DNA of 49,152 nt from Macrostomum lignano (GCA_002269645.1 NIVC01004351.1:1-49152), one strand, 5' to 3'. Numbered from the stretch's first letter, positions 1,808-46,501 are shown. The notes: generated by a model from the sequence alone, not told the origin. A program made the numbers and translations.

Positions 1808-4241
1808 TCAGAGCATCTTCAGCTGCCAAGTTCTTATAACTCCGTCGTCATCGTGCGCTGTTCGGCCAGCCGACCTGAAGAAGCGCAGCAGAAACGGATA
1901 GAGTCTCACAGCTCGGAAACCGCGATCCAAAGCGATCAAGGGGTACAGGGTGTCGAATTTGTTCGACACGTCGTTGAAAGCGTTAGATATAAACGCAATA
2001 ACGAAGTTGGCAATGTTGATGCTGACAGCCATGACGAAAATTGTGTGCAGCACACAGACTGACGGCTTATGCGTTAGGTTAGCTACGTTAATCAAGACTT
2101 TTAACGGCGAATAGAGTACATCTCGCGGATTTTTGAACTCTTGGCCGGAGAAATCGGCCAGGTAGAAAATTGAGCCAAGGATCAGGTAGCCCCAGCCAAA
2201 GAGCAACGGCAGCACTAACAGAAATTTGGACAACATCTTGCGAAAGCAGACAGCCAGAAAGGCGAAAGGTTTAGAAACTAACTCGTACGATTCGATCACT
2301 GACAGAATGTCAAAGAAGGCGTAAAGCACCGCAGCGCACTCTGCCACGTTGGCCAGGCCTGACAAGCGCAAATTCTCATTGGTGACACCCAGAACAAAGT
2401 CGGAGCAGTCTAAACTGCCCCTGATTTGTGACGACACAGCGCAGTAGACTAGGCCGAAGCAGAAGCTGAGAAAATAAGCTCCAAGGTAAAAATTTGAGTG
2501 CACCAGAAACTTTTTTCTAGTGGGCATCCATTTCCTAGAAAAGAACTGTCGATCTTTGATAAAATTGTAGAAGATCACCAGCAGTTGGGTGCACAGGCAG
2601 AAGTACATAATGGGCAAGGCAATGTCCATCCTTTCAATAATTTCCCTGCGTCTAACAATCTGGAAAGACAGTGGCGACTGGTATGCCACAATCATATTCT
2701 TCGGATTCTCTTTATCCAGCAGGTAATGGAGCACATTGTCTGCTGAGCAGTTCTTGGGCACCTCCGAAACGAGGGCTTCCGTGCCATTAGCTGTGCTATT
2801 GTTCAATAGTATCGACTTCAGTAGGTTGCCGTATTCGTAAAATCCCGTCTCCAGGTGGTAGCTTGACTGTATGATCGATACTGAAAATGTGGTTGTAAGC
2901 GAGTATGTGCCGATAAGGTTTCCCATGGCTGGTTGGAAACTGCAGAGGAGTGGAATAATGCTGGCCACTTCTTTAGCGAGGGTTTCAGTCCATTTTTTAA
3001 TGACCGGGGACTCTAGGAAAGCTGACCTGGCCAGAGGATCCGCCTGCTCCGTTGTGACCAGAGTCAGCATGAGCATGGGATGCTTGTCCCTTCGCTCTCC
3101 GGTCAACAGATCGTAATCCTGCACGTTGAAGGTGCTGCGAACTCGAACGCCGTGGCTCACCTGCTTGGTGAGAATGTATCCCTCCACGTGTATGATGAGG
3201 TTGAACGTGGAATAAGCTCCAATTAGGATAGAATACTCCAGCGGCCTCAGTCCGTCAGAGTTTTCCATTAGGCAGAGTGACTGAAGCATGTTTGACGTCG
3301 ATCTGCAATGAATAGGATTTGCGACTCAGCTAAAAAGCTCAGTAACGATATGGAGAAGCAAAGAAGCGTTACCATATAAAAGCTGAGTTATTGCGTGGTT
3401 AATTAGTTGATTAAGTCAACGGAGTCACGACCAGGACTTTATAGACATCGTTTCGCAATGTATAACAACGTATGCTAGCTTTATTAATGGCGTGATACAG
3501 GAGCAATAGGGACTAGAATCAATCATTTTTATGAGATCAGTAATCTCCTCGTACAAGCTGCAGACTGCTCAGAAAGTCAGAAAAATATCGTATAGTCCCT
3601 GTCCTTTCCAGGCACAGAGTCCTCAAAAAGATTGTCCATTGCGATAGCTTAACTCACCGCTGCTCCGAACTGGGACTTTCGAGTGTACATGTACTGCTCA
3701 GAATGGAGAACACCCGAGTTTGAAAATCGTCATATTCTCTAGCAAGCCGATAGTCCCCGTCTTTTGTCGAAATTGTCAGCAGCGCCTTTGCTTTAGCCAT
3801 GCAGTGCAACAGGCCGGAGCCAGAGTCGTCCTGCATCATCAGCAGGTTCGGATGCTGAGCCGCTATGAACTTCAACACCTGACTGCTCTGCGTCAGCGTG
3901 CACAGGTGAGCGATTCTACTAAAACTAACTTCATCAGATGATGAAGTTACTAGACTGGAAGAAGATCGGTTCAAGCAGCGAACTGCAAATTGTTGTTCAT
4001 TGCTAACTGACAGGTGACCGCTAAGGTGCTTGCTGCCAAGCCCAGCGTCGTAGAGTACCTCAAGCATTTGGTGTGCATCGTCGGACTTGAGGCAGTCAGT
4101 CAGCAGAGTTGACAGCTGTGGCTCGAACCGGAACTCGGTCTCATAGAAGTGCGGAATCATTGCTATTCTCGCTTTCTGCCTCGCTAGCAGGAGCAGAAAA
4201 TGTTTCCAATTTGCTTCTATTATATTCCCCAACACCCAAGC
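1808..4241 (-). CDS. Divergent TRP/Ion_trans-like multi-pass cation channel, 2 exons (about 4241..3658 and 3302..1808)
   Basis: ORF 3654..4235 ends at a perfect donor CG|GTGAGT (3658/3657). It joins in frame to acceptor CATTGCAG|A (3303/3302), giving ...EQR-STSN-MLQSL... Exon 2 has 5-6 hydrophobic segments, an S4-S5-linker-like KPFAFLAVCFRKMLSKFLLV, a pore-like FKNPRDVLYSPLKVLIN and an S6-like IANFVIAFISNAFNDVS (compare TRP LLNLLIAMMxxTY). Exon 1 has an ankyrin-like QDDSGSGLLHCMAK. The 5' start is uncertain; the first in-frame ATG is MIPHF, near 4160. Confidence 0.6.
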
Positions 4242-5017
4242 CTAACCCCAACTGCTATTGGCTGCATAGTTTGTGGATCTACTAATTATTAACGACGAAA
4301 TCTCGTAATCACAGAGATCCTGAGTCTATTTGTCTACCTGACAGTTGCGCTCTCTATATAGTAAAAAGCTCGTGTTCCCCATTACAAGCAGGCATGCAGT
4401 CAGATGGCTAGCTGAGCCTTGTGCATATGGTTTCCAAAGCAACGCATAGATCAAGTGCAAACAATCGCAGTCGATGAATCGGACTTCTTGCCATAATATG
4501 CGCACTAAGCCAAAGCAAATACAGAAGCTGGTGATCGGGAAAAAGAGTTCATTTCGTTATTTTATTACTTTCATTATCAGTCTCAGCTTACCACTACATG
4601 CGAATAGAAACCCTATAGAACTTAAGAAAATGTAAGAAAAAATTAGCCTAGCGATATGACCGATTAAATGTTGAAATAATGATTTAATATAACAGTTATA
4701 TAATTGTTTAGCTAAAATTTCAACACACATGGACAGTTGAGGCAGAATAAAGCTACAATTCGAATTTCTTAGAAACAAATTCAATTTCTCGAGCTGATTT
4801 CTAAGAAACTCAAGCGCAGCGTTCTTCAACTTCAGCTGTCCATGTGTACACACTACTAAATACGAATTGCAAAACGCACAGCAAAATTACTATAGCTAAT
4901 TTCTAGTCATGCAACTGTACGGAAAAAAAAACTATTGAAACAATTCAGCAAAAGATTTCACCAATGCCAAAACAAAGAACAAGTTGAGGTCTCTAACAAC
5001 GAAGCGTCCACAAACTG

Positions 5018-8000
5018 TTAAATCATCGCTTTCTTCACAGCAGCCCGGCTCGCCTCTGTCGGCCTGTTGATGTACGGGTTGCACTTGGGATCATTGTCCG
5101 GGCACACGCACTCGACGCCCTGATTGGGCGCAGCCAAACAGATGTACTTGCAGTCGCCGTAGCCGCGACTGTCAGCGCAGGGATGCTCGCCGCTGGAGAC
5201 CTGCTGGCCAGAGGCGGGACAGGCGGCGCTGTCCACAGCGACGCCCAACAGCAGGTTCTCCAAGCTGCCAAACGGTCCGCGAACGAACGTTCGATTCAGG
5301 TTGACATTGTGACCGACAATTTTATTCGTTAACCAATTGGTCCAGTAGAAGTCACCGCCTTCGGCGTACGCCATGCCGAACGGTTCGCCCGACCAGGCGA
5401 TGCGGATCGGTCTGGATCGCTCCACGTAGGCGGCGTCGGGCACCGGGCGCCAGAGGCACTGGACGGCTACTTGTGTCGACGAAGAATTACGACGAGCCGC
5501 TGACAAGTTCTGGAGCGAACTGTTCGGCGGTAAATCGGCCATGCTGTAACAGACCTCTTCGTTGCGACTGTCGAACCGTCTGATCACGTCGTTGGGCAGA
5601 GGGCCGCCAGTGCTGACCAGCTTGACGTGATTGGCACCGTTCATGCTGGCCATCATCACCCGCGGATCCGTGCGGTCCCAGTCCGCGTAGTAAATTTTTC
5701 TGCAAGAAATACAGACTCAGATGGCTCAGGAAGATTTCATATTAACTGTGAGTCTGTTATCTTAATAGGTCAGGTCACTCACCCGAGAAACGGATCTACT
5801 GCGATCCCGCGCGGTCTAACAACGCCGTCCTTTGGTCCCCGAAACAGCACCTTCTTATAAGCGACTCCCTGTCTGTAGGCGATCACGCCGATCTCTCCAA
5901 ACCTGGCTCCCCTAGTCGCTTCATCCTTGCTGACATACTGAGCCGTGTAATAGACATTGTCAGTCTGCCAGTCAACCGCCAGGCCTTCTACTTTCTCCAG
6001 GCCTTCGCCGAACGGCACCCAGGTGCTGCTGACGGGCCCGCCTGCGCCAGAATCGGCTGTGCTGGCAGCGTACAATCTGGGATGGCCGTACACTGACCAC
6101 ACCAGCTGCTTTCTGTTGCAATTGTAGTCCATAGCGACCACAGGAGAGCCGGGCCTGGGTGCTCCGGGCCCCGACGCGGCCGCCGAAGCCGACGACATTG
6201 CGATGAACAGTCGACGAACGGTTGACGAATCGCTCTGAGAATCGTCAGCCGGCATCTGGAAGATGGCGTCGCCCTGGGCTACGTAGAGAGTCCGACCGAT
6301 TTGAGCTCGGGTTCGGCACACAGTCGCTCCGGAGCTAGTTAGGACCTCCATCCTGCCAGGTGGACAGCGGCAGACCCTCAGCTGAACCTGCTCCACCCTG
6401 CCGTCGAGTCTTCGATGCTCCACCGTCTCCTGCTCGCAGGTACCGGCGTTCAATCGACAGGTATCGCAGGAGACTGACGCTCTGCAAGAAGTGTCACCTT
6501 GGCCAAAGTAGCCGCTGGCGCAGACGCATCGGTACTTGTTGTCCAACTCGCTGTACTTGCACTCCGAGTTCTGTGGTAAGGACAAAATGATTGACTGCTT
6601 TAGAGTAATTGTCATTGTGTATGATGTAGCTTGTAGAAAAACTCAACCAAAAATGTCTTACCTTAACACATCGATTGTAGAAGTTACAGCCGGGCCCGTC
6701 TCTTTCGCACCTGAGCTTGCCGTCGCCGCTGAAGCCTTCCCGACAGCGGCACTGCCGGCGACCGTCGACCAGAGCGCATTCGGCGTTCGCGTGACAGCCG
6801 GTGGTCTCAGTACAGGCCTCTTGGCGGCGCTGGCACCGGCCCTAAGTTGTCACGGAGGTTTCAGACTGATTTTAGATTCCGCAACAGTCTTAAAGTACTT
6901 TCGTGGGTAAAAATGTGAGCAAATGAACAGAGAAGCCTCGTCAGCTAATTAGTCAGTTTCTATTGTAGATTTTCGACTGTATTGAGACGGTTATCCAGGG
7001 TTATTTGGAGGTTTTTTGATTTTACGTATTACTATAGAATAGTACTAGTAGTTTTAGCTAATCTATAAAACTAAACTTGAACCAAGCTACACCATTTTAA
7101 CCATTTTGTCTTCAATGAACCCCTAGGGCAGGTGTCGGCAAAAATTTTTACTTCAACGATCAGATTGAAGAATCCAGCTCGTGGCTAGGGGCGAGATAAG
7201 AGAGAAGACAAGAGGAGAAAAGAAGGGAGAGACGAGAGAAGGGAGAGGAGAGATGAGAGAGGAGAGAGGGGAGAGGGGGAGAGGGAGAGAGGAGACAGAG
7301 AGAGGGAGAGAGAGAGGAGATAGTGAGAGAGGGAGAGAGGAGAGAGGAGAGAAGAGAGAGGAGAGAGGAGAGAGGGAGAGAGGGGAGAGAGGGGAGAGAG
7401 GGGAGAGAGGGGAGAGAGGGGAGAGGAGACACAAAAATTGAGCGGGACAGGTTACTATTTAAAAGTTTTAAAGGGCCCGAGGGCCGGATTTTCCTGATCC
7501 TTGCCTAGGGCGACACCATAGAAGTTATGAGCCCCAAAAAGAGGTTATGTATATACTAAATGAGTGGAACTCCTCCTTCGGAGGAGGAAGGAGAAGAACT
7601 CCCATCGCACCTTAACTATATACAAGCTATAGCTAAGGTACACAGAATCCCCTTTGACTTTTTTTGCAAAACAATTCCCCAGGCCAATTTTCGCGCATGA
7701 GCATTAAGACCTCACCTGTACCCGTTCCATTCCAGGCGCGCACTCGCAGGTGTACTGGCCAGTGTCCCGATTAAACAAGCAGAGCTCAGTGTCCGGATCG
7801 CACAGCTGCTGCTCAATACAGCTGGCCCTGTCGCACCTGTTGACCCCGTCGCCTGAGTAGCCGCGGCTGCACTGACATCCCGGCCGACTATAATTGCAGA
7901 ACGCCTGAGCGTGGCACTGGCGACACGGATTGTCCAGCACCGTAATATTGACGCTCAGACTGGCGCCGTCCTCTCCAGCAACGCTCGGAAAGCAGTGATA

Positions 8001-11000
8001 CTCTTTGGCGTCTGATTTCACTACGCGACTGAACCGAAGCACCTTGCGATCGTTCAGTACAAACTGCACCAGACGGTCTGTGCCCTCGTCAATCGGCATT
8101 GGCACGCCTTTGATTGCCGTCCAGATCAGATCTTTGGTTCGAACTGGGCCGCGGATAACTCGACAGAACATCTCCATTTCTGTTTGGCCTTCGTATAGAG
8201 TGATCTGGAAGTTGAATAAAATTATTTTTTATTGTTTTGCCATATTGGTAGACACCTTGCCTTACCAACAATCACCAAGGTCACATTGCCTTACCAACAA
8301 TCAACAAGGTCACCTTGCCTTATAAACAATCACCAAGGTCACCTTGCCTTATAAACAATCACCAAGGTCTCCTTGCCTTACAAACAATCACCAAGGTCAC
8401 CTTGCCTTATAAACAATCCCCAAGGTCTCCTTGCCTTATAAACAATCACCAAGGTCACCTTGCCTTACAAACAATCACCAAGGTCACCTTGCCTTATAAA
8501 CAATCACCAAGGTCACCTTGCCTTACAAACAATCACCAAGGTCACCTTGCCTTATAAACAATCACCAAGGTCACCTTGCCTTACAAACAATCACCAAGGT
8601 CACCTTGCCTTACCGACAATCACCAAGGTCACCTTGCCTTACAAACAATCACCAAGGTCACCTTGCCTTACCGACAATCACCAAGGTCACCTTGCCTTAT
8701 AAACAATCACCAAGGTCACCTTGCCTTACCAAAAATCACCAAGGTCACCTTGCCTTATAAACAATCACCAAGGTCACCTTGCCTTACCGACAATCACCAA
8801 GGTCAGCCTTACCAACAATCACCAAGGTCACCTTGCCTTACCAACAACCACCAAGGTCACTTTACCTGAGTCCCGTTGCTGAGCATCAGTAGCGTGTCTT
8901 CTTTGACGCATCCTTGATCCTGCAACAACAGTTTAAAGTACATGTGTATCAGAAAAACAGAAAAAATGTGTGGGCTCTCACTAATATAGTTCTAATAAAC
9001 TATTATTCTTTACATTCTTTTCTTGCTACTTTTCAGTAGGCGATCTCTTATCAAATGCTTCCTATCAAATGAAATGGTGCCCTCTCTCAAATGAAATGGC
9101 GCCCCTCTCTCTCAAATGAAATGGCGCCCCTCTCTCTCAAATGAAATGGCGCCCCTCTCTCAAATGAAATGGCGCCCCTCTCTCTCAAATGAAATGGCGC
9201 CTCTCTCTCAAATGAAATGGCGCCCCCTCTCTCAAATGAAATGGCGCCCCTCTCTCAAATGAAATGGCGCCCCTCTCTCAAATGAAATGACGCCTCTCTC
9301 TCAAATGAAATGGCGCCTCTCTCTCAAATGAAATGGCGCCCCTCTCTCTCAAATGAAATGGCGCCCCTCTCTCAAATGAAATGGCGCCCCTTTCTCAAAT
9401 GAAATGGCGCCTCTCTCTCAAATGAAATGGCGCCCCTCTCTCAAATGAAATGGCGCCCCTCTCTCTCAAATGAAATGGCGCCCCTCTCTCAAATGAAATG
9501 GCGCCCCTCTCTCTCTCAAATGAAATGGCGCCCCTCTCTCTCAAATGAAATGGCGCCGCTCTCTCTCTCAAATAAAATGGCGCCTCTCTCTCTCTCTCAA
9601 ATGAAATGGCGCCTCTCTCTCTCTCAAATGAAGTGGCGCCTCTCTCTCTCTCTCCCAAATGAAGTGGCGCCCCTCTCTCTCAAATGAAATGGCACCCCTC
9701 TCTCTCAAATGGAATGGCGCCTCTCACTCTCTCAAATCGAATGGCGCCTCTCACTGTCTCAAATGGAATGGCGCCTCTCACTCTCTCAAATCGAATGGCG
9801 CCTCTCACTGTCTCAAATGGAATGGCGCCTCTCACTCTCTCAAATCGAATGGCGCCTCTCACTGTCTCAAATGGAATGGCGCCTCTCACTCTCTCAAATC
9901 AATCGAATGGCGCCTCTCACTGTCTCAAATGGAATGGCGCCTCTCTCAAATGGAATGGCGCCCCTCTCTAACATAAATAGCGCCTCTCCTAAACAAATTG
10001 GTGCCTCTCTCTTAAACGAAAACGGCCCCAACAACCAAAGCACACCAGACTTCGCAGCCCATACCTTCGGGTTCTCCGACTTGTAGCCGTACCGGCACCG
10101 ACAAGTTCGCCCACCAGGCCGACTCTCGCACTTGGCGTTGGTGCCGCAGGCCAATGGCGACGAGCCAGTCTGACCCGGCTGGCACTCGTCGCACGCCGAC
10201 TTCCCGTCGCCAACTTTGCCCGGCGGACACTTGCACAGCCGGACACCGGACAGGCGGACGTCTGTCTGGCAGGTGGCGCCGCGCAGGCACATGGAGTCCG
10301 AGTCGCAGTTGGTGCAAGTCAAGGTCAAGGAGGTCGCGTCCTGCCTGTCCACTGTGTAGCCCGGCCGACATTCGCAGACACCAGACATGCAGCCCATTGT
10401 GGCGTTTAGTATTTCCAAATCGTTGGGAAGCACATCCTTGTTGCAGTCCTGTAAATGTTTTGATCACGTTTCGTAGGGGTGGTGGAGCCGTAAGGTGCAC
10501 AAAAAGAGGCACTTTAGTGGCCTATTTCGTGTATGCTTTCGAAATGCAAAAAAGAGGCATGAAAGGTGTACAATCGGTGAAGTGGTCAGGCATTTGGGGA
10601 ATGGTCCGTTTTGATTGGTTGCGGTGGTAGGGGCAGTAAAGGTACGTAAGGTGTACATGATGTACAGCGTAAGCAGGTGCATTTCCAAAACATGCACGAA
10701 ACAGGCCACTAAAATGCCTCTTTTGTGCACCGATCGCTCACCTTTTATGCCTACGCAGCTGCATAACTTTTCTAACGGGAATTAGTAATAAAAATTATAA
10801 CTGAGAGTTGCATAGTGAGTTTTGCATTAGTAAGGAAAAGTTTCGAATCTTTTTAAAGAATAGTGAGGAAAAGTAGCAAAGTTGGAACGCCCCTTGCATT
10901 GCTTCTACGCCTGGAGTGCCCACTGTGCACCTTTTGTTCCCCTTTTGTGCCTCCAATGCACACTGTGCACCTTTAATGCACCCAACTCCCCTATGACACC

Positions 11001-19096: not shown

Positions 19097-19416
19097 TGCG
19101 GTATAGCTGCTATGAGAGAGCCTTGTGTGGTGCGGAGTGGGAGGCTGTTGCTAAGGTTTTATAGACCCAAAATCTTCCACATCCCCCCCCCGAAAAAAAG
19201 ATTTTCTATCCCCAAGAAGGAATGCACACAGAGGTATCTGTACAGTTTAACCTCGAGCCACCAACCCACCAATACACACCCACCACAAACAAGGCAGTGA
19301 TGGGTGCCCAGTTAGAAGATAATCAATAATTAAGACTTCTGATCAGCCATGGAGTCCCAGACCGAGTCAGATGGATTTTACAGTCGCTACAGCTTAACAA
19401 CCGAAAACAGACTTGG

Positions 19417-22146: not shown

Positions 22147-22147
22147 A

Positions 22148-32378: not shown

Positions 32379-32408
32379 AATGTTTGCTACGACAATACGA
32401 TTAAAAAG

Positions 32409-32435
32409 CTGAAAATGCAAGTTAGATGAAAAAAG
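32409..32435 (-). promoter_or_regulatory. Candidate unpaired 3' splice acceptor (TTTTTTCATCTAACTTGCATTTTCAG) 30 nt upstream of the LENG9-like ATG
   Basis: Branch-point-like CTAAC, a pyrimidine tract and TTTTCAG. Confidence 0.55.
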
Positions 32436-35832: not shown

Positions 35833-36338
35833 TCAACGATTGGAGCCAGCTTGTCCAGCCGCAGGTGCTCCAGCCGCTGGCACAGGAAAATCTGGATTGG
35901 AGCCTTGGCCCTGTTGTCCTTGTCCTTGCTGCTGTTGTTGCTGCTGATTGCCGCCAGAGAATGAGCTGAACACGGCCGACAGAGCCTGTCTGCCTAGAAA
36001 CTCCTTAGCAACGCTTGATAGCTCTTTCTTGGCGCCGTATCTGCATCGAATATAGCCGTATAGATTGGCGCCATTCATCACAAATGCCACTATGACTGCC
36101 ATTATCCAGCGAATATTGAGGGTAATCAAAGCCACTATGAACATTAGCGACCACACTAGCTGGGTGCCGACCAGACTGAACCAGAATAGGCGGGACTCGG
36201 CTCGAGAAACCAGCTGTTCTGCACCGCGGCTTCGAGACTCGTACACCCAGTGACTCTTGCCCGACTCGTCTACGTAGTTCCACCAGCGCAGGCCTACAAG
36301 CTTGCGGCCCGTGATGTTCTTAACCTGCAATGGATAGA

Positions 36339-36375
<37 letters not shown>

Positions 36376-36395
36376 TGAAGGACAGACAGACTGAC

Positions 36396-36426
<31 letters not shown>

Positions 36427-36430
36427 CACT

Positions 36431-36482
<52 letters not shown>

Positions 36483-36486
36483 CACT

Positions 36487-36573
<87 letters not shown>

Positions 36574-36721
36574 GGACAGAGACAGACAGACAGACAGACG
36601 GACAGAGACAGACAGACAGACAGACGGACAGAGACAGACAGACAGACAGACGGACAGAGACAGACAGACAGACAGACAGACGGACAGAGACAGACAGACA
36701 GACAGACAGACAGAGACAGGC

Positions 36722-36753
<32 letters not shown>

Positions 36754-36827
36754 GGACAGAGACAGACAGACAGACAGACAGACGGACAGAGACAGACAGA
36801 CAGACAGAGACAGACAGACAGACGGAC

Positions 36828-36881
<54 letters not shown>

Positions 36882-37207
36882 GGACAGAGACAGACACCAA
36901 GACACTAAGACAGATAGACAGAATCGGATAGAGAATGACAGGATATAAAAAACACACAGATAGAGAAACTCACAGTCCAAAAATCCAAGGACAGCAGTAT
37001 GAGCACAAAGACAAAAGCTGTGATGAAGGAGTCTGTAAACAGCGAGCTGAGCAGGTAGAGCAGAAACGCTATCAGGCGGAACAGCAGGTGAGCACCGGCT
37101 GCCATGGGGTGGGGAAATCGCTTCGGATGCGGCGTCGGGTCGCCGAAAACGCCGCCCCCGGTGCCGTCGTCCATGGTCAGGGGAACCGAATCGCCGCTGG
37201 TCATCAT
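35833..37207 (-). CDS. TVP23: Golgi apparatus membrane protein TVP23 homolog, 2 exons (37207-36974, 36324-35833), about 241 aa
   Basis: Junction ACT|GTGAGT ... TTGCAG|GTT gives HLLFR...[38 protein letters not shown]...NGANLYGYIRC, diagnostic of TVP23/FAM18. Confidence 0.95.
36333..36920. repeat. (GACA)n/(GATA)n microsatellite filling the TVP23 intron
   Basis: Direct inspection. Confidence 0.95.
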
Positions 37208-38275
37208 GGCTGGCTCTGTGTGAACTCCGGATATGTGGAGCTGCTATTGCATGAAAAATCATAATTATTTTTTCTTCGTGATTCAACGCGATTTGCGACT
37301 CAAATTTTCTGTTTCAGCTTAAGATCTGGGATCTGGGACCAACAAAGTGGCCAAGAAGTATGAATAACTAAGGGTGATAATCTCGTAATGGTTGGCCTAA
37401 TAAGCAACTGATAGCCCAGACGTTTGTCGTGTATAAACCATTGTAAAAAGGAAGTAGGCAAAGACTTTTAGAGTTGCTTAAGCGATCAAATTTGGCACCA
37501 GAGTATGCCAAGAAATATAAGATAAATAGATTGTTAATTTTAAAAACTTTGACACAATTTGACACAAGCCAAACAGTTAAAAGGCAAAAAAGTTAGGAAA
37601 ATTGTATAGGTTCCGATCTAGAACTCTTCGCATTAACATTTTTATATTTGCTAAGCTAGATAAATAGTTTTAACCACAGCTGCTGCAACTGAGCTACATC
37701 TACACAACAGTGAGCACACAAAGGAATGGCTTTCATCTCTCTCTCATCTTTGTACACACGCCTGCATTTACATCACTGGTGCAAAGCTCAGCAGGTATTA
37801 CTTCGAGCTGCCAGGAAGCGCGGAGCTCACATTACGAGAACAGCTTCAGCAGAACAACGAAAGCTGCGACGCCTGTTATTCGCTAAAGTATAGGTTGCCT
37901 TTTGTTTGAGGCTTAAACTGCTGCTCATACTGCTGTTTTTAAACTGTTCTAGTTTGCGTTGAATGTTCACAATTAATATCAACATTTTCATGTTGCTACA
38001 GCTGCAAATATACAATCGGGACCTTCTGTCCATAAAAATATTTCCCCTCGAATAAACGTACAAAAAGGTGACTACTTCTCAAATTTCAGTTCTTCTTATC
38101 TCTTCTTCACCTCAGTAGTGTCTATGGTTTTATATTTTGGCTTTCGATTTGGAAGCTGATTGAGCATTCTGGTGTATTCTGTGGTTTTAACTAGGAAATA
38201 AATGGCAGTGCACTACGTCATTGACTAATGCTCTTAGCCTCTATTAATGGTAGATTAATATATAAGCAAATATAT

Positions 38276-39443: not shown

Positions 39444-41024
39444 TCAATGTTTCATCTGCATTTTAGCCAGAGCACTTGCAACATCCAAGACAGGTTTTGT
39501 CTGCTGCTCTATATGCTTCTGTGGGATCTCCATGGTAAATTTCGGACGAAAATTTGGTCGATCTTCGAACAAACCATTAAACTTGGATTCGCATTTTTTG
39601 ATATTGTCATAGCACCATTGATGCACAGATGTTTCATTCGTATCTTGCTGTTTAATACGAATTTCTAGATCAATTTCTTCCGCGTTTAGTTCTATTAGGC
39701 TAAATTGAAGACTCGCTGTGCAAGGTTGTCCGGTTTGAGTGGCAAGTGTGTTTAGGTCGTGCAGATGACACTCAATGGTACTCCGTAGATTACGCATATT
39801 AGCGTCGTTAAATTCCGTTCCAGTAATTTTAAAGAAAATTGCAGGATCGGTACGCGGGATGCTACGGCCGATAGAAGGATCTTCTGAGACTGTAGGCACG
39901 GCAGGAGGAATGTCGGGTCGGGCCTCATTATTTGCAGCAACCGGACGCCGAGGAACATTCGGTCCATATAAGGGTTCCCAATCTTGAATATTCATGTCAT
40001 TCAGAATGCCTTTCAGTTCTTCATTAGCTTTCTGGGCACTGATTCTCTCTGAGGGACCCTTCGTCAACAATTTTTCAAGCAGGCTCCTAGTTCTCCGCCG
40101 ACATTCTTCATTAAATGCATCAGAGCCTTCAAATGTGCACATATTTAGATATAGCACTTTCCAACCCTCACTGAAGAATTCCAATTTAGTCTCAACCGAT
40201 TCATCACTCTCTGTAGGATCTTCGACGTCGTCAGATCTTCCAATTTTATTAGGATGAGATCGAAACAGTGACTCAATGCAGACCATACCAAAGGAATAAC
40301 AGTCCGCAGCAGTAGTGTAATCTTCACCGTTGGCAACTTCTGGAGCTCTCCAATAAGGAGTTCCGACGCCCCTGGTCATTGGCTGTTCTACTGGCTTGCT
40401 GATACCAAAGTCTGAAAGCTTGCAGTTTCTTCCTTCATCAAACAGCAAAATGTTACAGCCTTTTAGGTCCCTATGAATGATATTATGCATTTTGCCTTCG
40501 AATTGAATTCCGCCGTGCAGGTAAGCCAACGCATCAGCGATTTGTTGCATGAAACGAATAAAATGGCCAAAGGAGTAGGGGCCTTCAGGTACAGTGGCAA
40601 CACTTGTGTCTAACAATAAATTATAAAGGTTGCGGTCGGCAAGCTCCATCAGAAACAGCGGTGTGTAAGATTCAAGTTCATCGGAATATCCCATAAACTT
40701 CCAAGCAGAGACAATTCTCTTGTGCGCTTCATTAGTTTGGGGGGACTTGTGCGCTTCATTAGTTTGGGGGGACTTGTGCGCTTCATTAGTTTTGGGGGAT
40801 TTAAAACTGCTCAGAAGCTTGTATTCGCGACGGAATATTTGTAAGTCTTTAGCTACATCACTAGCTGATCTAATTTGATTTTTTGCGAACGACTTTATAG
40901 CCAATTTGATTGTTTCACGAGAACCATTATTATTATATTTTACGAAGCAAGAGAATACTCCGTGACGTGTGTTGATAGGTTCGATCGTTTCTTTTAAAAC
41001 GTCGATGTCGGAATTCGACCCCAT
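39444..41024 (-). CDS. Intronless Ser/Thr or TKL-like protein kinase with an unrecognised C-terminal domain, about 526 aa
   Basis: Motifs LAIK, RREYKLL, HRDLKGCNILL, DFGIS, GTPYWRAPEV, DCYSFG and RISA. The first ATG (MGSNSD) is at 41024; the ORF track starts 9 codons earlier at TTG. Confidence 0.85.
   Translation of the reverse strand: MGSNSDIDVLKETIEPINTRHGVFSCFVKYNNNGSRETIKLAIKSFAKNQIRSASDVAKDLQIFRREYKLLSSFKSPKTNEAHKSPQTNEAHKSPQTNEAHKRIVSAWKFMGYSDELESYTPLFLMELADRNLYNLLLDTSVATVPEGPYSFGHFIRFMQQIADALAYLHGGIQFEGKMHNIIHRDLKGCNILLFDEGRNCKLSDFGISKPVEQPMTRGVGTPYWRAPEVANGEDYTTAADCYSFGMVCIESLFRSHPNKIGRSDDVEDPTESDESVETKLEFFSEGWKVLYLNMCTFEGSDAFNEECRRRTRSLLEKLLTKGPSERISAQKANEELKGILNDMNIQDWEPLYGPNVPRRPVAANNEARPDIPPAVPTVSEDPSIGRSIPRTDPAIFFKITGTEFNDANMRNLRSTIECHLHDLNTLATQTGQPCTASLQFSLIELNAEEIDLEIRIKQQDTNETSVHQWCYDNIKKCESKFNGLFEDRPNFRPKFTMEIPQKHIEQQTKPVLDVASALAKMQMKH
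40719..40799 (-). repeat. 27-bp in-frame triplication (TNEAHKSPQ) inside the kinase N-lobe
   Basis: CTTGTGCGCTTCATTAGTTTGGGGGGA x3 seen directly. Confidence 0.9.
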
Positions 41025-41249
41025 TGTAACTGCAGTTTTAAACTTGTTCAATAGAGTGCTTCGAAATTTTAAATCTTCGAGATTCTCATGGGAGCAAAAG
41101 GTTCAGTTATTTATTTAATTAAAAAAACTAGACCTATCTTTAAAAAACTAGTGAACTATTCGATGAAAAATATATGTATCGGTAAAAAAGGATGATATAT
41201 TAAAATAATACGATGACATTCAAAACTTTGGGGAAAAGTTATCTGCGCG

Positions 41250-41506
41250 GATCTGGGAGGCTGGCCCAGCAACTGAGGATCTGGGAGGCTGGCTCAGCAA
41301 CTGAGGATCTGGGAGGCTGGCACAGCGACTGAGGATCTGGGAGGCTGGCTCAGCAACTGAGGATCTGGGAGGCTGGCACAGCAACTGAGGATCTGGGAGG
41401 CTGGCTCAGCAACTGAGGATCTGGGAGGCTGGCCCAGCAACTGAGGATCTGGGAGGCTGGCCCAGCAACTGAGGATCTGGGAGGCTGTCCGAGCAACTGA
41501 GGATCT
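41250..41506. repeat. 28-bp dispersed minisatellite family, copy C (about 9 units)
   Basis: Same unit as copies A and B. Confidence 0.95.
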
Positions 41507-41789
41507 CGGAAGCGGTAGCCTGGTAACTGGGAATCTGATAGGAAAACCCATAAACTTGTAGATTTTAATAACTACACTGGCTAGTAATAGAATCTCCTAA
41601 AAAAGCACCGAAGAAACAAGTAATTATAGAGAAATTCTTAATCTTACTTGCATTTATATTATTGATAAAATAACCCTTACAACCTTAAATTATCTTGCAA
41701 CTATGATTTAAATAAATCGTACGTACAAGTCGGAGGTAAAAGAAATGACAATAATCGTGACGTATTCTAAGAAACACTGCATCATTTTA

Positions 41790-43902
41790 TCAATTATTCT
41801 GGTGATCAGCAGATGAGGCTGGCGACGGAGTGGCAGAGTATTGCACCAGACAGCCACCAAAGGCATCGTCTTCACCGGCAGCTTGGGCATTTCTGACGAC
41901 CGGCGCAGTCGGCGAAGCATTCATCATCGAGGATATCGCCAAAGCATCCGCCGTCAAGGATGTCGCCGAAGCACCCACCGTCGAGGATGTCGCCGAAGCA
42001 CCCACCATCGAGGATGTCGCCGAAGCACCCACCGTCGAGGATGTCGCCGAAGCACCCACCATCGAGGATGTCGCCGAAGCACCCACCGTCGAGGATGTCG
42101 CCGAAACATCAACTATCGAGGACATCGCCGAAGCATTCACCTTCGAGGACGTCGCCGAAGCATCCATCTTTGAGGACGTCGCCGAAGCATCCACTGTCGA
42201 TGCCGAGGCATCCGCCGTCGAGGACGCCGCCGAAGCATCCACATCCACCTTCCAGGACGTCACCGAAGCATCATCACGTGACCTGTTTCGCCGAAAAGTA
42301 CCTCCAACAACGACGCCCATCATTCGCCGATTCTGACCAGTCCGTCGTTTCAACTCCTCCGGCTCCGCAGCCCTAGCCGACTTAAACGCCGAACAACCCG
42401 ACTTTTTGTACTCTTCCTCCGAATTGGCATCGGCACTAGCGACTCGTTTAGTCGGTCTGACAGCATCAACTGGAGCAACACCGCCCATCCGCAGCAGTTG
42501 AGCTCCGACTTCATCAGCCGACGATTCGGGCAACAATTCCAACGAGCCGCCAGTCAGCGAGTGTCTGGCAAGCAACTCTGCATCGCTGGCAGACTGGGCG
42601 GCCAGTCGCTTGCGTTCCTGGCGTAGGCCGGCTCGGACCAGACGATTCAACTGGATGTCAGCGGCGCCGCGAGCACCCGCATCGACGGCTAAAGCGGCGA
42701 GTCGAGGCGCGCTTTCTTCTCCGCGCTGTTCGTCGGATTTACCGTGCTCTAGTTTGTACATAGCATCGGTTGCTAAGCGACGCTTTGTCTCGCCGTCCTC
42801 CGGCGCGATTTGACCATTCTCTGTTGGATCCCAGCGTTGCTCTTTTCGGCGAGCCCCGGATACGATGACGTAATCAAAGTTGGCGGGATCTGTGCGGATC
42901 AGATACCTAGAATGATGAGTGTGGGTCAGTCAGGTTATAAACACTACTGATCTCTACTTTGATTAAATGGGGACAACATAATTGACCCCTGTCTGTGATT
43001 AAATTTTGACCCCCTACTGTGATTAAATGGGAACAATTGATACCCTCCTGTGATCGATTGGGGACAATTGAACCCCCCCCGCTACTGTGAAAAAATGAGG
43101 ACAATTGACCCCCACTACTGTGATTAAATAGGGACGATTGACCCTCCCAGCTAGTGATTAAATGGGAACAATTGACCCCTACAGTGATTAAATGGGGACA
43201 ATTGACCCCCAATAGTGAAAAATGGGGATAATTGACCCCCACTACTGTGACTAGATTGCAACAATTGACATCCTTCTGCGGTCGATTGGGGACAACTGAC
43301 CCCTGTCTGTGATTAAATTTTGACCCCCTACTGTGATTAAATGAGGGCAATCGACCCCTAATGTGATTAAATGGGGACAACTGACCCCCAATAGTGAAAA
43401 AATGGGGATAATTGACCCCATTACTGTGATTAAATCGGAACAATTGACCCCCACTACTGTGATCAAGTGGGGACAGTTGAACCCACTACTGTGATCAAGT
43501 GGGGACAATTGACCCCCTACTGAGATCAAACAGGGACAACTGACTCCCTCGAAATAAATGCAGTTAACTAAAATCTCTTAAGCAATAAAAAGCAAATTAA
43601 CCAATAACAAACCTCTGATCGCACAGGTGACACTTCATATTAAACTCGTACACAGGTGTACTATAGTACATGCCGACCTTTTTCTTCTCGGCATTGTACC
43701 TGACACCCATAGCAACGTGTCTACCGCAGCCGCCGCACCAGATATTATAGGGCATCTCGAACCGGATAACAATAACGCCTTGACCGATCTTCTTAGCTCG
43801 TTCGCGCAGAGCGTGAGTGCCATGATATGCGTCTAAGCTGCGATGCACCCGAGGATCAAAGTCTGGCGGATAATATTTGTTTGTACCTTTGCGTTCTCCC
43901 AT
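41790..43902 (-). CDS. CCDC130: Splicing factor CCDC130/YJU2B (CWC16 family), 2 exons (43902-43613, 42906-41790), about 468 aa
   Basis: MGERKGTNKYYPPDFDP...IRFEMPYNIWCGGC...MGVRYNAEKKKVG.YY.TPVY.F.MKCHLC. Junction AG|GTTTGT ... TTCTAG|G gives CDQRYLIRTDPANFDYVIVSGARRKEQRWD...TDAMYKLEHG. Confidence 0.95.
41935..42260 (-). repeat. 27-bp coding minisatellite (ATSSTVGAS/ATSSMVGAS) in the CCDC130 C-terminal region
   Basis: Unit GAGGATGTCGCCGAAGCACCCACCGTC on the plus strand, in frame within exon 2. Confidence 0.9.
42945..43545. repeat. About 33-bp degenerate minisatellite (CTGTGATTAAATGGGGACAATTGACCCCCACTA) in the CCDC130 intron
   Basis: Direct inspection. Confidence 0.9.
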
Positions 43903-43966
43903 GGTAACTATATATCAGCGAATTCCACGACCGATTTAGTGCCCTCTCGCTGTTCAGGCAGGTACG

Positions 43967-43990
43967 CTGAAAAAGTAAAAAACTAATAAT
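43967..43990 (-). promoter_or_regulatory. Candidate unpaired 3' splice acceptor (TTTTACTTTTTCAG) 64 nt upstream of the CCDC130 ATG
   Basis: U-rich tract plus CAG, with no upstream exon evident in the 540-nt gap to the NOC4L stop. Confidence 0.5.
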
Positions 43991-44039
43991 TAATTTTTTT
44001 GTAGAAAAATTGGCTCTATTTGAATTTCACACCTTAATA

Positions 44040-44300
44040 ATCTTTATCGCTAATTATTTACACCTGTAGTTGTTTTTATCGCCAATTATTCTCACCTCAG
44101 CCCTCTTTATCGCTGATTATTCACACCTTTTGTCATATTTATCGCTAATTATTCCCACCTTTAGTCATCTTTATCGCTAATTATTCTCATTTTTAGTCAT
44201 ATTTATCGCTAATTATTTTCACCTTAGCCATCTTTATCGCTAATTATTTACATATTTAGTCATCTTTATCGCTAAGTATTCACACCTTAGTCATCCTTAT
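44040..44300. repeat. About 33-bp degenerate minisatellite (TTTATCGCTAATTATTCACACCTTAGTCATC) between NOC4L and CCDC130
   Basis: Direct inspection. Confidence 0.85.
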
Positions 44301-44505
44301 TACAAATTATCCAAACTTAATTAGTGAACCAATTAAACAATTACCAAATCAGAACGGTTTTGTCCACAAATTCTAAACCAGTTGAAAATTAGCAGTTGGA
44401 AAAATTGGAAAATGCACGAATAAATGTATTTTGCAAACAAATTTATTCTGAAATAGTCACGATCAGTAAGAGCACAGAAACTGAGACAGACTCTCGGTGA
44501 TACAG

Positions 44506-46501
44506 TTAACACCATCCATCCAGTTGCTTCAACAGCTCGTCTCCGTCAACAGCTGGGTCGACTTCTTCGTCGCTAGCGTAGCCAGATTCTTTCAAAGCTT
44601 CCGCCTGTTTCAGACAGTCAGGCAGAAGATCCTCGCACACCTGGTCCCAGTCGCGTTCGACCACCTGTGGGACGAGAGAGAGAGTGAAGTTTAAACTCTA
44701 CTTGCGCATCGATTATGAAATTTTCGTGTTATTTTTGGTGTCAAACAATTGAAGCCATTACAGAAAATCTTTCAAGACTTTCTAAATCCCTTTAGGCTCT
44801 TTCCGAATCCCATTAGGCTTTTCTAGAATCCAATTAGGCTCCTTCCGAATCCCTTTAGGCTCTTTTCAAATCTCATTAGGCTCTTTCTGAATCCCTTTAG
44901 GCTCTTTTCAAATCTCATTAGGCTCTTTCCGAATCCCTTTAGGCTCTTTTCAAATCTCATTAGGCTCTTTCCGAATCCCTTTAGGCTTTTTCCGAATCCC
45001 AATGGCTCTTTCCGAATCTCAATAAACTCTTTCCGAATCCCATTAGGCTCTTTCCAAATCCCCTTAAGCTCTTTCCTAATCCAATTCAAAGGCTCTTTCC
45101 GAGTTCAATTAGGCTCTTTCGGAATCTAATTAGGCTTTTTTCGGAATTCCATTAGGCTCTTTTTGAATCCAACTAGACTATTTCCTAGTTCAATTAGGCT
45201 CTTTCCGAATCCCACTAAGCTCTTTCCAAATTCCCTGACGCTCATTCCGAATCCCATTAAAGACTCTTTCCGAATATCTTCAACTCTAAAGTTTAAACTG
45301 TTTCCAATAACCTCACCAAAAATCTCACCTGTTTGTCGCAAAAATCTTCCACAACAGACAGAGCCCTATTGATCTTTTTAGCCATCTGTCCAACCGACAG
45401 TTCCCAATGCCGCTGCAGAACTCTCAGCTCCCATAGCGAATATCCAGGCGAAGCGGCTTCAGCTTCGGTCAGACTGATTGACATGCTAAACTCATTTGAA
45501 CCGCCTGAACCATTCAGCTTCTCGTTAGCCTCTTTAACGTCCTCATCGTCTTCAGCCTGCCTATGCACCAGATACTGACACTTCTTATGACGTCGGAGCA
45601 GGTTCAACACTAGGCCAATCAGCATTGGCTGACAATAACACGGCGCCAACAGGCACAGACTCGCTAGTCTCTTAGCAAACGCGGCAATTCTAGCCGTGGA
45701 AATATTCGTAGCCGTCAAGATAAGATCTAACTGACGATAGAATCGGCCACGATAAGGCGACATCAAGCCGCTTAACGACACCAGCTGGTACAGTCGATCA
45801 AACAGAGGACCATAATCTAGAGAATAGTTGAACACCAGATGAAATACGCAAGGAGTTGCGGCCATGCCAACTTCAACGTTGTTGCTTTCGAAAGCGGACA
45901 TAATGAAGTCGGCTAGTTGCATAGCATTAGTCAGCAGGCCTAATACACGATCATTTAGCAGCACTAGCAGACTGCATAACTGCTTGCTCTTATTGCTAAC
46001 TGGCAGTGGACAATCTAGATAGCGACGCCACAATTTGCCGTACTGTTTACGCAACTGACTAATAGACATTAGTTTCTTCTGCAATTGACTATAGAATTCC
46101 GATTGTTTCGACCAGAAACTGTGACAGCGACTGTCCGATTCTGGTTGAGTCTTCTGCAATAGCAGACGATCCTGCCGAGTTAGCCGTTTAGGAAAATTGA
46201 ACGCAAGTAGGAGACGCTCAATATTGGCGTGACGAATTCTGTAGTTAATACTTTCTAACTTATTACTACTAGTAGCTAGCTTTCTTAATTCCGCGTCAAG
46301 AACTTGCATGCACATTAGGGAGACGTCTGAATAAGCCAGATACGGCTGTAGCTCAGATACCAATGCAGTCTGTTCTTCCTCATCTTGACAGCTGATTAAC
46401 CAGCCTATAGGATCTTCGAAATCGGCTCGTCTTGGAACTGACTGCTGAATCTGTTGCCAGTTCAACAAGTTGGAAGGATTTTTAGTTGACGATAATGACG
46501 C
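44506..46501 (-). CDS. NOC4L: Nucleolar complex protein 4 homolog (CBF/Mak21 domain); exons about 46501-45329 and 44664-44506; no ATG at the 5' end
   Basis: LDYGPLFDRLYQL...YRGRFY...AAFAKRLASLCL.AP...NLLRRH..C..LVHR...SLWELRVLQRH matches NOC4. The last exon (not in the ORF track) follows CAG|GTGAGA ... CCCACAG|GTG and reads VVERDWDQVCEDLLP...LDGWC*. The 5' boundary is inferred from an in-frame CTGCAG acceptor. Confidence 0.88.
44780..45255. repeat. 21-bp minisatellite (CCGAATCCCTTTAGGCTCTTT) with a 42-bp dimer, NOC4L intron
   Basis: Direct inspection. Confidence 0.9.

What the first reader, a model, noticed from the sequence alone, without database searches (positions are those of the whole stretch)
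1808..46501. Eight of eight genes are co-oriented, several with unpaired acceptors just upstream of the ATG: candidate trans-spliced or operon-like cluster
Seen: NOC4L, CCDC130, kinase, TVP23, LENG9-like, TUBGCP4, nidogen and the TRP-like gene are all on the minus strand. Some gaps are short (NOC4L stop to CCDC130 ATG about 600 nt; CCDC130 to kinase about 765 nt; nidogen to TRP-like about 780 nt), and most longer gaps are largely repeats or TEs. Acceptor-like sites sit just before the start codons: TTTTTCAG (CCDC130, -64), CTGCAG (kinase, -5), TAGCAG (TVP23, -36/-33), CTAAC...TTTTCAG (LENG9-like, -30), and ATTCAG/CTGCAG (TUBGCP4, -10/-4). Known: flatworms, nematodes and tunicates resolve polycistronic pre-mRNAs by SL trans-splicing at such sites, with housekeeping genes enriched. 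Inference: part of this cluster is a polycistronic unit that includes three RNA-processing genes. Chance co-orientation of 8 genes has probability 1/128, and ordinary 5' UTR introns are an alternative.
Basis: partly seen in the sequence, partly recalled or inferred. Interest (0 to 1): 0.7.

Follow-up and report, generated by a model that had tools for sequence, protein, structure and literature searches.

The report
Known flatworm trans-spliced gene cluster
This stretch of the flatworm Macrostomum lignano genome holds five neighbouring genes whose messages receive the species' spliced leader, and the first three or four look co-transcribed as an operon; both features are already published and annotated for this species.

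Summary
The window is contig NIVC01004351.1 of the published Macrostomum lignano Mlig_3_7 assembly. Seven co-oriented minus-strand genes are confirmed by the GenBank annotation. The eighth ("TRP-like") rests on an ORF model only.

M. lignano is known to trans-splice about 30% of its genes to one 35-nt leader ending in AUG, and to hold about 15% of genes in operons.

The published annotation gives NOC4L, CCDC130, the kinase and TVP23 one transcriptional-unit name (Mlig014239 g8-g12), and NOC4L is flagged TRANSSPLICED. The 2H-phosphoesterase (LENG9-like) and GCP4 genes have separate unit names.

New evidence: the assembly was polished with RNA-seq. In some of six assembly copies the last 3-5 bases before an acceptor are overwritten by the leader's 3' end (..GCATG). 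These footprints mark trans-splice sites at 43966 (CCDC130), 41086 (kinase), 37249 (TVP23) and 32408 (LENG9-like).

Its kinase and TVP23 sites are wrong, because the window is corrupted at the true acceptors. GCP4 has no support, and the nidogen-like gene has a candidate TATA box.

Verdict: a real trans-spliced cluster with a probable 3-4-gene operon, not an eight-gene unit. Already known biology.

The parts
44506..46503 (-). NOC4L (CBF/Mak21) gene, BOX15_Mlig014239g8. Acceptor AG at 46503-46502 (ctgcag|G). Exon 1 is 46501-45329. The intron holds a 21-nt minisatellite. Exon 2 is 44664-44506. The gene has no ATG of its own; the frame is open from 46501 and in phase with the SL's terminal AUG.
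   Evidence: Pfam. 100% identity to M. lignano A0A1I8HQ60. NCBI models are 5'-partial. Mlig014239.g8 is listed as {Length 1468}{TRANSSPLICED}. Model and length check. In-frame 3-nt indel just after the acceptor in L009.
41790..43968 (-). CCDC130 (Saf4/Yju2) gene, Mlig014239g9. Trans-splice acceptor tttttcag| with AG at 43968-43967. Exon start 43966, ATG 43902. Exon 1 ends at 43613; exon 2 is 42906-41790.
   Evidence: The exact 468-aa model is in NCBI as PAA47735. NIVC01000031 carries 'actttGCATG|CGTACC' where four other copies have 'ttcag|'.
39444..41090 (-). Protein kinase gene (paralogous copies are named Mlig014239g6 and g16). The true trans-splice exon starts at 41086, 62 nt before ATG 41024. 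Window bases 41090-41087 read CATG where five other copies read TCAG, which is an SL footprint in the window itself.
   Evidence: The annotated 5'-partial CDS starts at 41078 here. In NIVC01000031 it starts at the first in-frame codon after ctcctcag|. Names.
35833..37253 (-). TVP23 (DUF846) gene, Mlig014239g12. Inferred trans-splice exon start 37249 (CAATAGCAGC...), 42 nt before ATG 37207. Bases 37253-37250 read CATG. Exon 1 runs to about 36974. The intron is a 587-nt (AGAC)n array. Exon 2 is about 36323-35833.
   Evidence: The exact 241-aa model is PAA47733. All four copies differ only in the 3-5 bases before CAATAG, and all end in ATG: tttttCATG, tttttttATG, ttttGCATG, tttttGCATG.
31021..32410 (-). 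2H phosphoesterase (LENG9-like) gene, Mlig019835g1. Acceptor cattttcag| with AG at 32410-32409. Exon start 32408, own ATG 32378 (in phase with the SL AUG). Exon 1 ends at 32293; exon 2 is 31561-31021.
   Evidence: The annotated 5'-partial CDS of 218 aa starts exactly at 32408. NIVC01000031 has 'gcatttCATG|CTTTTT'. Pfam 2_5_RNA_ligase2.
23706..29513 (-). TUBGCP4 gene, Mlig033622g1, five exons.
   Evidence: My 655-aa model equals PAA47731. The upstream sequence aattcagctgcagtcacATG is identical in three copies, with no footprint.
5018..19163 (-). EGF-repeat extracellular protein ('nidogen-like', 1672 aa), ATG at 19096. TATAAAA at 19163-19157, 67 nt upstream, is a candidate promoter element of its own.
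   Evidence: Annotation. Pfam gives EGF-type hits only. Sequence.
1808..4160 (-). Multi-pass membrane protein ORF ('TRP-like'). This is my two-exon model, 4160-3658 and 3302-1808, 665 aa. Neither its identity nor its annotation is confirmed.
   Evidence: No Pfam hit. No exact or homologous database entry found.
43969..44505 (-). NOC4L-CCDC130 spacer, 539 nt from stop to acceptor. AATAAA at 44447-44442. 275 nt is a 32-nt minisatellite (44026-44300), which leaves 264 nt including the 3' UTR.
41091..41789 (-). CCDC130-kinase spacer, 703 nt from stop to acceptor. 262 nt is a 28-nt minisatellite (41249-41510), which leaves 441 nt including the 3' UTR.

Best explanation
The window is a published, annotated piece of the Macrostomum lignano genome. 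Five consecutive co-oriented genes (NOC4L, CCDC130, a kinase, TVP23 and a 2H phosphoesterase) are matured by trans-splicing of the species' single 35-nt spliced leader, which ends in AUG. The leader is joined at acceptors 30 to 64 nt upstream of their start codons. For NOC4L it is joined directly onto the reading frame.

The first three genes, and probably TVP23 as well, are transcribed as one polycistronic precursor. That precursor is cut into mRNAs by 3'-end formation plus SL trans-splicing, which is the ordinary M. lignano operon. Its spacers are inflated by minisatellites.

Shown here:
- species identity and gene models;
- the trans-splice positions, from assembly footprints and annotated 5' ends;
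- the shared transcriptional-unit name.

Inferred:
- co-transcription from one promoter;
- the SL AUG acting as the initiator for NOC4L (no ATG of its own) and possibly extending the 2H protein by 11 residues. For the kinase, TVP23 and CCDC130 the SL AUG would instead open uORFs of 6, 2 and 37 codons.

GCP4, the nidogen-like gene and the TRP-like ORF are most likely separate units that happen to face the same way.
For: Species and contig: 100% identity to M. lignano NOC4L; NIVC01004351.1.

Known biology:
- PMC8629364 gives the SL sequence CGGTCTCTTACTGCGAAGACTCAATTTATTGCATG. It reports 30% of genes trans-spliced and 15% in operons.
- Its operon rule is a repeat-subtracted distance below 1 kb between co-oriented trans-spliced genes, with a mode near 100 bp. 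Repeats inflate operon spacers, and the largest operons have nine genes.
- PMC5730564 states that transcriptional units with several trans-splice sites are precursor mRNAs, and that clustered units share a name prefix.

Locus-specific evidence:
- Mlig014239.g8 (NOC4L) is listed as TRANSSPLICED with length 1468. That length fits an mRNA starting at 46501.
- NOC4L is g8, CCDC130 is g9 and TVP23 is g12 of Mlig014239. The kinase paralogues are g6 and g16.

SL footprints:
- Methods of PMC5730564 say Pilon polishing used RNA-seq.
- YAG is replaced by (G)CATG exactly at 43966, 41086 and 32408. At 37249 all four copies end in ATG.
- Between the window and L001 there are 171 differences in 12,807 non-repeat columns. 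Only two clusters have at least 3 mismatches in 5 bases, and one of them is the kinase acceptor.
- Annotated 5'-partial CDSs start at the first in-frame codon after the acceptor for the 2H gene here and for the kinase in NIVC01000031.

Spacers, stop to next acceptor minus tandem repeats: 264 and 441 nt for the first two junctions.
Against: - No read-level data could be examined. Co-transcription rests on a naming convention and a distance rule, not on a transcript seen here.
- A shared prefix proves only that some assembled unit, in at least one of the six or more assembly copies, spans these genes. Such units can also arise from read-through or from long outrons that overlap the upstream 3' UTR.
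- The kinase-to-TVP23 spacer is 2.2 kb. Only 293 nt of it is recognisably repetitive with the data at hand, so it exceeds the 1-kb rule.
- About 60% of trans-spliced M. lignano genes are not in operons.
- Each spacer keeps 180-300 nt of unique sequence, which could hold a promoter.
- NOC4L shows no footprint in five copies. Annotated 5' ends for NOC4L and the kinase in this contig lie 6-9 nt downstream of the acceptor, and this offset is unexplained.
Confidence: 0.65

Rival explanations
1. Each of the five genes is trans-spliced but has its own promoter and outron (monocistronic trans-splicing). The shared transcriptional-unit name reflects read-through or overlapping outron and 3' UTR coverage. 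Co-orientation is chance or the residue of an older operon.
For: About 60% of trans-spliced genes in this species are outside operons. Unique sequence of about 180-300 nt remains in the two short spacers, and more than 1.5 kb in the kinase-TVP23 and TVP23-2H spacers. The 2H and GCP4 genes already carry separate unit names.
Against: The first two junctions meet the published operon criterion even before repeats are subtracted. Four unrelated genes share one unit prefix with consecutive gene numbers on this contig. Order and orientation are kept in all six copies examined.
Confidence: 0.27
2. All eight genes form one very large operon, as the title of the finding suggests.
For: Eight of eight are co-oriented. 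The published maximum operon size is nine genes, and repeats are known to split assembled units. Much of each long spacer is tandem repeat, up to about 64%.
Against: - No trans-splice evidence exists for GCP4, the nidogen-like gene or the TRP-like ORF.
- There is a TATAAAA 67 nt before the nidogen-like ATG.
- The 4.6-kb GCP4-nidogen spacer takes a further 9-kb insertion in NIVC01000031.
- Three different unit names occur across the six genes whose names could be read; the nidogen-like and TRP-like names could not be read.
- The non-repeat spacers of 2.7 kb and 1.7 kb exceed the 1-kb rule.
Confidence: 0.04
3. The upstream acceptors belong to ordinary cis-spliced 5'-UTR introns whose first exons lie further upstream.
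For: An acceptor without context cannot distinguish cis- from trans-splicing.
Against: The bases written over the acceptors are the SL's own 3' end (GCATG), not an upstream exon. NOC4L is flagged TRANSSPLICED. Annotated mRNAs begin at the acceptors.
Confidence: 0.03

Closest known systems
Macrostomum lignano operons and SL trans-splicing (Wudarski et al. 2017, PMC5730564; Ustyantsev & Berezikov 2021, PMC8629364)
   Same: Same species and same assembly. A single 35-nt SL ending in AUG. Pyrimidine-rich CAG acceptors. Co-oriented conserved housekeeping and neoblast-enriched genes. Spacers of a few hundred nt inflated by repeats. The locus already carries TU-based gene names.
   Different: Nothing essential. 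This particular four-gene unit is not discussed in the papers. The kinase-TVP23 spacer exceeds their 1-kb criterion as far as I could measure it.
Schistosoma mansoni and other parasitic-flatworm operons, and the flatworm SL 3'-terminal AUG used as initiator (PMC12582326, which cites Cheng et al. 2006)
   Same: The SL ends in AUG. There is an intercistronic spacer between the poly(A) site and the acceptor (S. mansoni median 99 bp, mean 233 bp). The NOC4L case, with no ATG of its own, fits SL-donated initiation.
   Different: Free-living macrostomid. Far more genes are trans-spliced or in operons than the few reported for S. mansoni. Conservation of this gene pair in parasites was not found in the supplements searched.
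Caenorhabditis elegans SL2-type operons
   Same: Polycistronic precursor. Downstream genes resolved by SL trans-splicing about 100 nt or more after the upstream poly(A) site. Enrichment for housekeeping genes.
   Different: C. elegans uses a dedicated SL2 for downstream genes. M. lignano has one SL. Spacers here carry minisatellites.
Ciona and Oikopleura operons
   Same: A single SL class resolves polycistrons of housekeeping genes.
   Different: Tunicate operons have little or no intercistronic sequence. Here the spacers are 0.4-2 kb.

Membership tests
SL trans-spliced gene of M. lignano | The organism possesses the SL RNA and trans-splices a large share of its mRNAs | tested here: met
   Window identified as M. 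lignano NIVC01004351.1. SL and its prevalence come from PMC8629364 and PMC5730564. No SL RNA gene lies in the window itself.
SL trans-spliced gene of M. lignano | A 3' splice acceptor upstream of the coding start with no paired cis donor (an outron) | tested here: met
   Intact acceptors in the window at 46502, 43967 and 32409. In paralogues, ctcctcag| for the kinase. The TVP23 acceptor is overwritten in all four copies, so its original bases are not seen.
SL trans-spliced gene of M. lignano | SL sequence joined to the exon at that acceptor in mature mRNA | tested here: met
   Indirect. (G)CATG footprints from RNA-seq polishing lie exactly at 43966, 41086, 37249 and 32408. NOC4L has a published TRANSSPLICED flag. 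Reads themselves were not available. No such evidence exists for GCP4, the nidogen-like gene or the TRP-like ORF.
M. lignano operon (criteria of Ustyantsev & Berezikov 2021) | Adjacent genes on the same strand, not interrupted by an opposite-strand gene | tested here: met
   Annotation shows only minus-strand genes from 13706 to 49152.
M. lignano operon (criteria of Ustyantsev & Berezikov 2021) | The downstream gene of each pair is SL trans-spliced | tested here: met
   Met for CCDC130, kinase, TVP23 and the 2H gene. Not shown for GCP4, nidogen-like or TRP-like.
M. lignano operon (criteria of Ustyantsev & Berezikov 2021) | Repeat-subtracted intergenic distance below 1 kb | tested here: inconclusive
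   Met for NOC4L-CCDC130 (264 nt) and CCDC130-kinase (441 nt), measured from the stop codon. Kinase-TVP23 is 2194 nt with only 293 nt of detectable repeat. TVP23-2H is about 1.7-2.7 kb. No genome-wide repeat library was available, so the long spacers cannot be judged properly.
M. lignano operon (criteria of Ustyantsev & Berezikov 2021) | One primary transcript spanning the genes | not testable with these tools
   Only indirect: the shared TU prefix Mlig014239 for four unrelated genes. No transcript or read data could be reached.
C. elegans-type SL2 operon | A specialised second SL is used for downstream genes | tested here: not met
   The literature reports a single SL in M. lignano. All footprints end in the same GCATG. 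The cluster works like such an operon but is not a member of that type.

The most novel reading that the evidence does not exclude
The Mlig_3_7 reference assembly is systematically corrupted at trans-splice acceptors. RNA-seq-based Pilon polishing replaced the last 3-5 outron bases by the SL's 3' end at 7 of 23 copy-sites examined here. If this holds genome-wide, there are three consequences.

1. Trans-splice sites can be read from the assembly alone, as (G)CATG-versus-YAG differences between copies.
2. It could partly explain why the published acceptor motif was found at only 9,551 of 21,754 sites.
3. It could mislead acceptor-motif, outron and gene-start analyses.

A second, smaller point is that NOC4L appears to depend wholly on the SL's AUG for translation initiation.
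Probability: 0.5. Interest if true: 0.3.

Novelty: already known. Interest (0 to 1): 0.2.

Why it matters
For biology it matters little. SL trans-splicing, operons with repeat-inflated spacers, and enrichment for conserved or neoblast genes are all published for M. lignano, and this locus is already annotated that way.

There is practical value for users of the Mlig_3_7 assembly. True acceptors can be masked by SL-derived CATG, as happens in this window at the kinase and TVP23 genes. Sequence-only prediction of trans-splice sites, acceptor motifs and start codons can therefore be misled.

NOC4L is also a clean candidate for SL-AUG-initiated translation in a flatworm with working transgenesis.

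Tried and rejected
- A concatenated query of four proteins returned only foreign fusion proteins and missed M. lignano entries that do exist. Negative results from that word-index search are therefore not evidence of absence. The same applies to the TRP-like search.
- Exact look-ups failed for the ATG-start kinase, the 208-aa 2H model, the 665-aa TRP-like model and its 493-aa terminal ORF. For the kinase and the 2H gene this is because the deposited models are 5'-partial and start upstream of the ATG.
- Rfam at gathering thresholds, ARAGORN, and a search for the SL with up to 3 mismatches found nothing in the window. There is no SL RNA gene here.
- Supplements of PMC5730564, PMC8629364, PMC12582326 and PMC7336406 held no rows for the other genes.
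- I first thought the SL AUG was in frame for the kinase and TVP23, based on the annotated 5'-partial ORFs. With the footprint-defined exon starts it gives 6- and 2-codon uORFs instead.
- The PDB sequence search aligns NOC4L only from residue 117 on. It neither proves nor disproves that the first 60 codons are translated.
- The bacterial promoter/terminator scanner was not used, because it does not apply to a metazoan.

Full report
**What the window is.** The 402-codon open frame at 46501-45296 (minus strand) is 100% identical to a Macrostomum lignano CBF-domain protein. Exact-sequence look-ups place my gene models on GenBank contig NIVC01004351.1 of assembly GCA_002269645.1, which is Mlig_3_7. 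The sequence is about 45% G+C and is packed with minisatellites of 20-34 nt period in introns and spacers.

**Check of the observation.** Pfam confirms CBF/NOC4L, Saf4/Yju2 (CCDC130), a protein kinase, DUF846/TVP23, a 2H phosphoesterase (the 'LENG9-like' gene) and GCP4. My spliced models for CCDC130 (468 aa), TVP23 (241 aa) and GCP4 (655 aa) are identical to deposited proteins.

The deposited annotation lists only minus-strand genes between 13706 and 49152, including a 1672-aa EGF protein that starts at 19096. 'Nidogen' is not confirmed beyond EGF modules. 'TRP-like' has no Pfam hit and no database match, and is only an ORF model at 4160-1808.

The stated gaps and acceptor strings are present. 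Alone they are weak evidence. CAG occurs in 56% of random 64-nt windows of this sequence, and the published trans-splice motif [T/C]TNCAG in 13%. Co-orientation of eight genes, 1 in 128 under independence counting either strand, is unremarkable for one window picked from a large scan.

**What is already known for this species.**
- M. lignano trans-splices one 35-nt leader, CGGTCTCTTACTGCGAAGACTCAATTTATTGCATG, onto about 30% of its genes.
- About 15% of genes are assigned to operons of up to nine genes.
- Operons are defined as co-oriented trans-spliced neighbours less than 1 kb apart after repeats are subtracted. The modal distance is about 100 bp, and repeats visibly inflate operon spacers.
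- Trans-spliced genes are enriched for conserved and neoblast genes (PMC8629364).
- The genome paper states that assembled 'transcriptional units' with several trans-splice sites are precursor mRNAs. A pipeline cuts them into genes, and clustered units share a name prefix (PMC5730564).

**What the public annotation says about this locus.** On this contig NOC4L is BOX15_Mlig014239g8, CCDC130 is g9 and TVP23 is g12. The kinase's paralogous copies are Mlig014239g6 and g16. The name of the window's own copy is hidden by the tool, but its accession falls between the others.

Four unrelated genes can share a prefix only if at least one assembled unit spans them. A published table lists Mlig014239.g8 as NOC4L, {Length: 1468}, {TRANSSPLICED}, neoblast-enriched. 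An mRNA running from 46501 to a poly(A) site shortly after AATAAA (44447-44442) would be about 1410-1420 nt. An annotated 3' end near 44362 would give 1468 nt. Either way there is no room for a further upstream coding exon. The 2H gene is Mlig019835g1 and GCP4 is Mlig033622g1, so both belong to separate units.

**New evidence: leader footprints in the assembly.** I fetched five other assembly copies of the locus: NIVC01005085, NIVC01004318, NIVC01000031, NIVC01000367 and NIVC01003511. They are 93-98% identical to the window and have the same gene order. Aligning the sequences upstream of each start codon gave four results.

- *CCDC130.* Four copies read 'ac[t/c]tttcag|CGTACC'. NIVC01000031 reads 'actttGCATG|CGTACC'.
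- *2H gene.* Two copies read 'gcattttcag|CTTTTT'. NIVC01000031 reads 'gcatttCATG|CTTTTT'.
- *Kinase.* Five copies read 'gctcctcag|AGAATCTCG'. The window itself reads 'gctcccATG|AGAATCTCG'.
- *TVP23.* All four copies differ only in the bases just before CAATAGCAGC, and all end in ATG: tttttCATG, tttttttATG, ttttGCATG and tttttGCATG.

[quoted passage not shown] The Methods of the genome paper explain why: the Canu assembly was polished with Pilon using Illumina DNA and also RNA-seq mapped with STAR. Leader-bearing reads evidently overwrote the last 3-5 outron bases.

A systematic scan for AG-to-ATG replacements found only these sites outside tandem repeats, plus one single-base coding SNP. Between the window and NIVC01005085 there are 171 differences in 12,807 non-repeat columns. 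Only two clusters have at least 3 mismatches in 5 bases, and one of them is the kinase acceptor.

The footprints are therefore nucleotide-exact marks of trans-splicing at exon starts 43966, 41086, 37249 and 32408. The annotation agrees. The 2H CDS is 5'-partial and starts exactly at 32408. The kinase CDS in NIVC01000031 starts at the first in-frame codon after ctcctcag|. NOC4L (46501) shows no footprint in five copies, but it carries the published flag. GCP4 shows neither.

CCDC130 (-64), the 2H gene (-30) and the NOC4L frame start are right. The kinase site is at -62, not -5. The TVP23 site is at -42, not -36 or -33. At both true sites the window is corrupted, so they were invisible to a sequence-only reader.

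**The leader's AUG.**

| Gene | Leader length to own ATG | Effect of the SL AUG |
|---|---|---|
| NOC4L | no ATG of its own; about 61 codons before the first internal Met | in phase with the open frame from 46501 |
| 2H gene | 30 nt | in phase; would add 11 residues |
| Kinase | 62 nt | 6-codon uORF |
| TVP23 | 42 nt | 2-codon uORF |
| CCDC130 | 64 nt | 37-codon uORF overlapping the start |

For NOC4L, one copy carries an in-frame 3-nt deletion immediately after the acceptor. SL-AUG initiation is a known flatworm mechanism (Cheng et al. 2006, as cited in PMC12582326). Here it is inferred, not shown. PDB homologues align only from residue 117.

**Operon or not.** Distances from each stop codon to the next 5' site:

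| Junction | Raw (nt) | Minus tandem repeats (nt) |
|---|---|---|
| NOC4L to CCDC130 | 539 | 264 |
| CCDC130 to kinase | 703 | 441 |
| Kinase to TVP23 | 2194 | 2194 |
| TVP23 to 2H | 3424 | 2728 |
| 2H to GCP4 | 1507 | 549 |
| GCP4 to nidogen-like | 4609 | 1726 |
| Nidogen-like to TRP-like | 857 | 857 |

- The first two junctions include the 3' UTRs and still meet the published operon rule.
- In the kinase-to-TVP23 spacer only 293 nt is recognisably repetitive.
- Subtracting a window-specific MITE and a SINE brings the TVP23-to-2H spacer to about 1.7 kb.
- GCP4 has no trans-splice evidence despite its short non-repeat spacer.
- The GCP4-to-nidogen spacer holds a further 9-kb insertion in NIVC01000031.
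- The nidogen-like gene has TATAAAA 67 nt before its ATG.

I conclude that NOC4L-CCDC130-kinase, probably with TVP23, is an ordinary M. lignano operon. The 2H gene is trans-spliced but probably a separate unit. The remaining three genes are separate. Co-transcription itself was not observed, and independent promoters with trans-splicing remain a serious rival.

**Novelty.** The biology and the annotation of this locus are published, so the finding is already known. The by-product is a technical caution rather than new biology: 7 of 23 copy-sites have acceptors overwritten by the leader. It may be worth checking genome-wide, because the published motif was recovered at only 9,551 of 21,754 sites.

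Noticed in passing
window 41090-41087 and 37253-37250; L007 12652-12656 region; L008 about 7547-7551: The assembly carries the spliced leader's 3' end (..GCATG, CATG or ATG) in place of the natural ..YAG at trans-splice acceptors. This occurs at 7 of 23 copy-sites across six assembly copies. It is best explained by Pilon polishing with RNA-seq reads.
   Followed up: yes
window 33970-34816 and 47304-48062: Two copies of an 0.8-kb MITE-like element with terminal inverted repeats (CAGTGTTGGGCAAGTTACT...). Both are absent from the corresponding positions in paralogous copies, so they are recent insertions. One lies in the TVP23-2H spacer and one upstream of NOC4L.
   Followed up: partly
window about 35240-35500: A tRNA-derived SINE-like element in the TVP23-2H spacer, in plus-strand orientation. 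ARAGORN and Rfam do not call it.
   Followed up: no
window 13818-13961, 29689-30259, 41249-41510: The same 28-nt minisatellite unit (GGATCTGGGAGGCTGGCCCAGCAACTGA) occurs at three separate places: a nidogen-like intron, the 2H-GCP4 spacer and the CCDC130-kinase spacer. This suggests a dispersed, possibly element-borne repeat family.
   Followed up: no
window 19163-19157: TATAAAA 67 nt upstream of the nidogen-like start codon is a candidate promoter element for a gene with no trans-splice evidence. No paralogue was available for comparison.
   Followed up: partly
window 40743-38651 versus L007 15736-17823: The kinase gene of the NIVC01000031 copy is only about 85% identical to the window, while the flanking genes are about 95% identical. 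The kinase diverges faster, or it was exchanged between copies.
   Followed up: no
window 40719-40799 and 41908-42242: In-frame 27-nt tandem repeats lie inside coding sequence: KSPQTNEAH x3 in the kinase and an (A/S/T)-rich repeat in the CCDC130 tail.
   Followed up: no
L008 18359-27353 (NIVC01000031): A 9-kb insertion, relative to the window, lies in the spacer between GCP4 and the nidogen-like gene. Its content was not examined.
   Followed up: no
window 46492 and 41078 (annotated CDS starts): In this contig the deposited 5'-partial CDSs of NOC4L and the kinase begin 6-9 nt downstream of the acceptor rather than at it. In other copies, and for the 2H gene, the start is exact. The cause of the offset is unexplained.
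   Followed up: partly
window 4263-4253: Upstream of the TRP-like ORF the sequence reads 'aaactATGCAGCCAATAGCAG'. Whether this ATG is another overwritten acceptor could not be tested, because no second copy was available.
   Followed up: no
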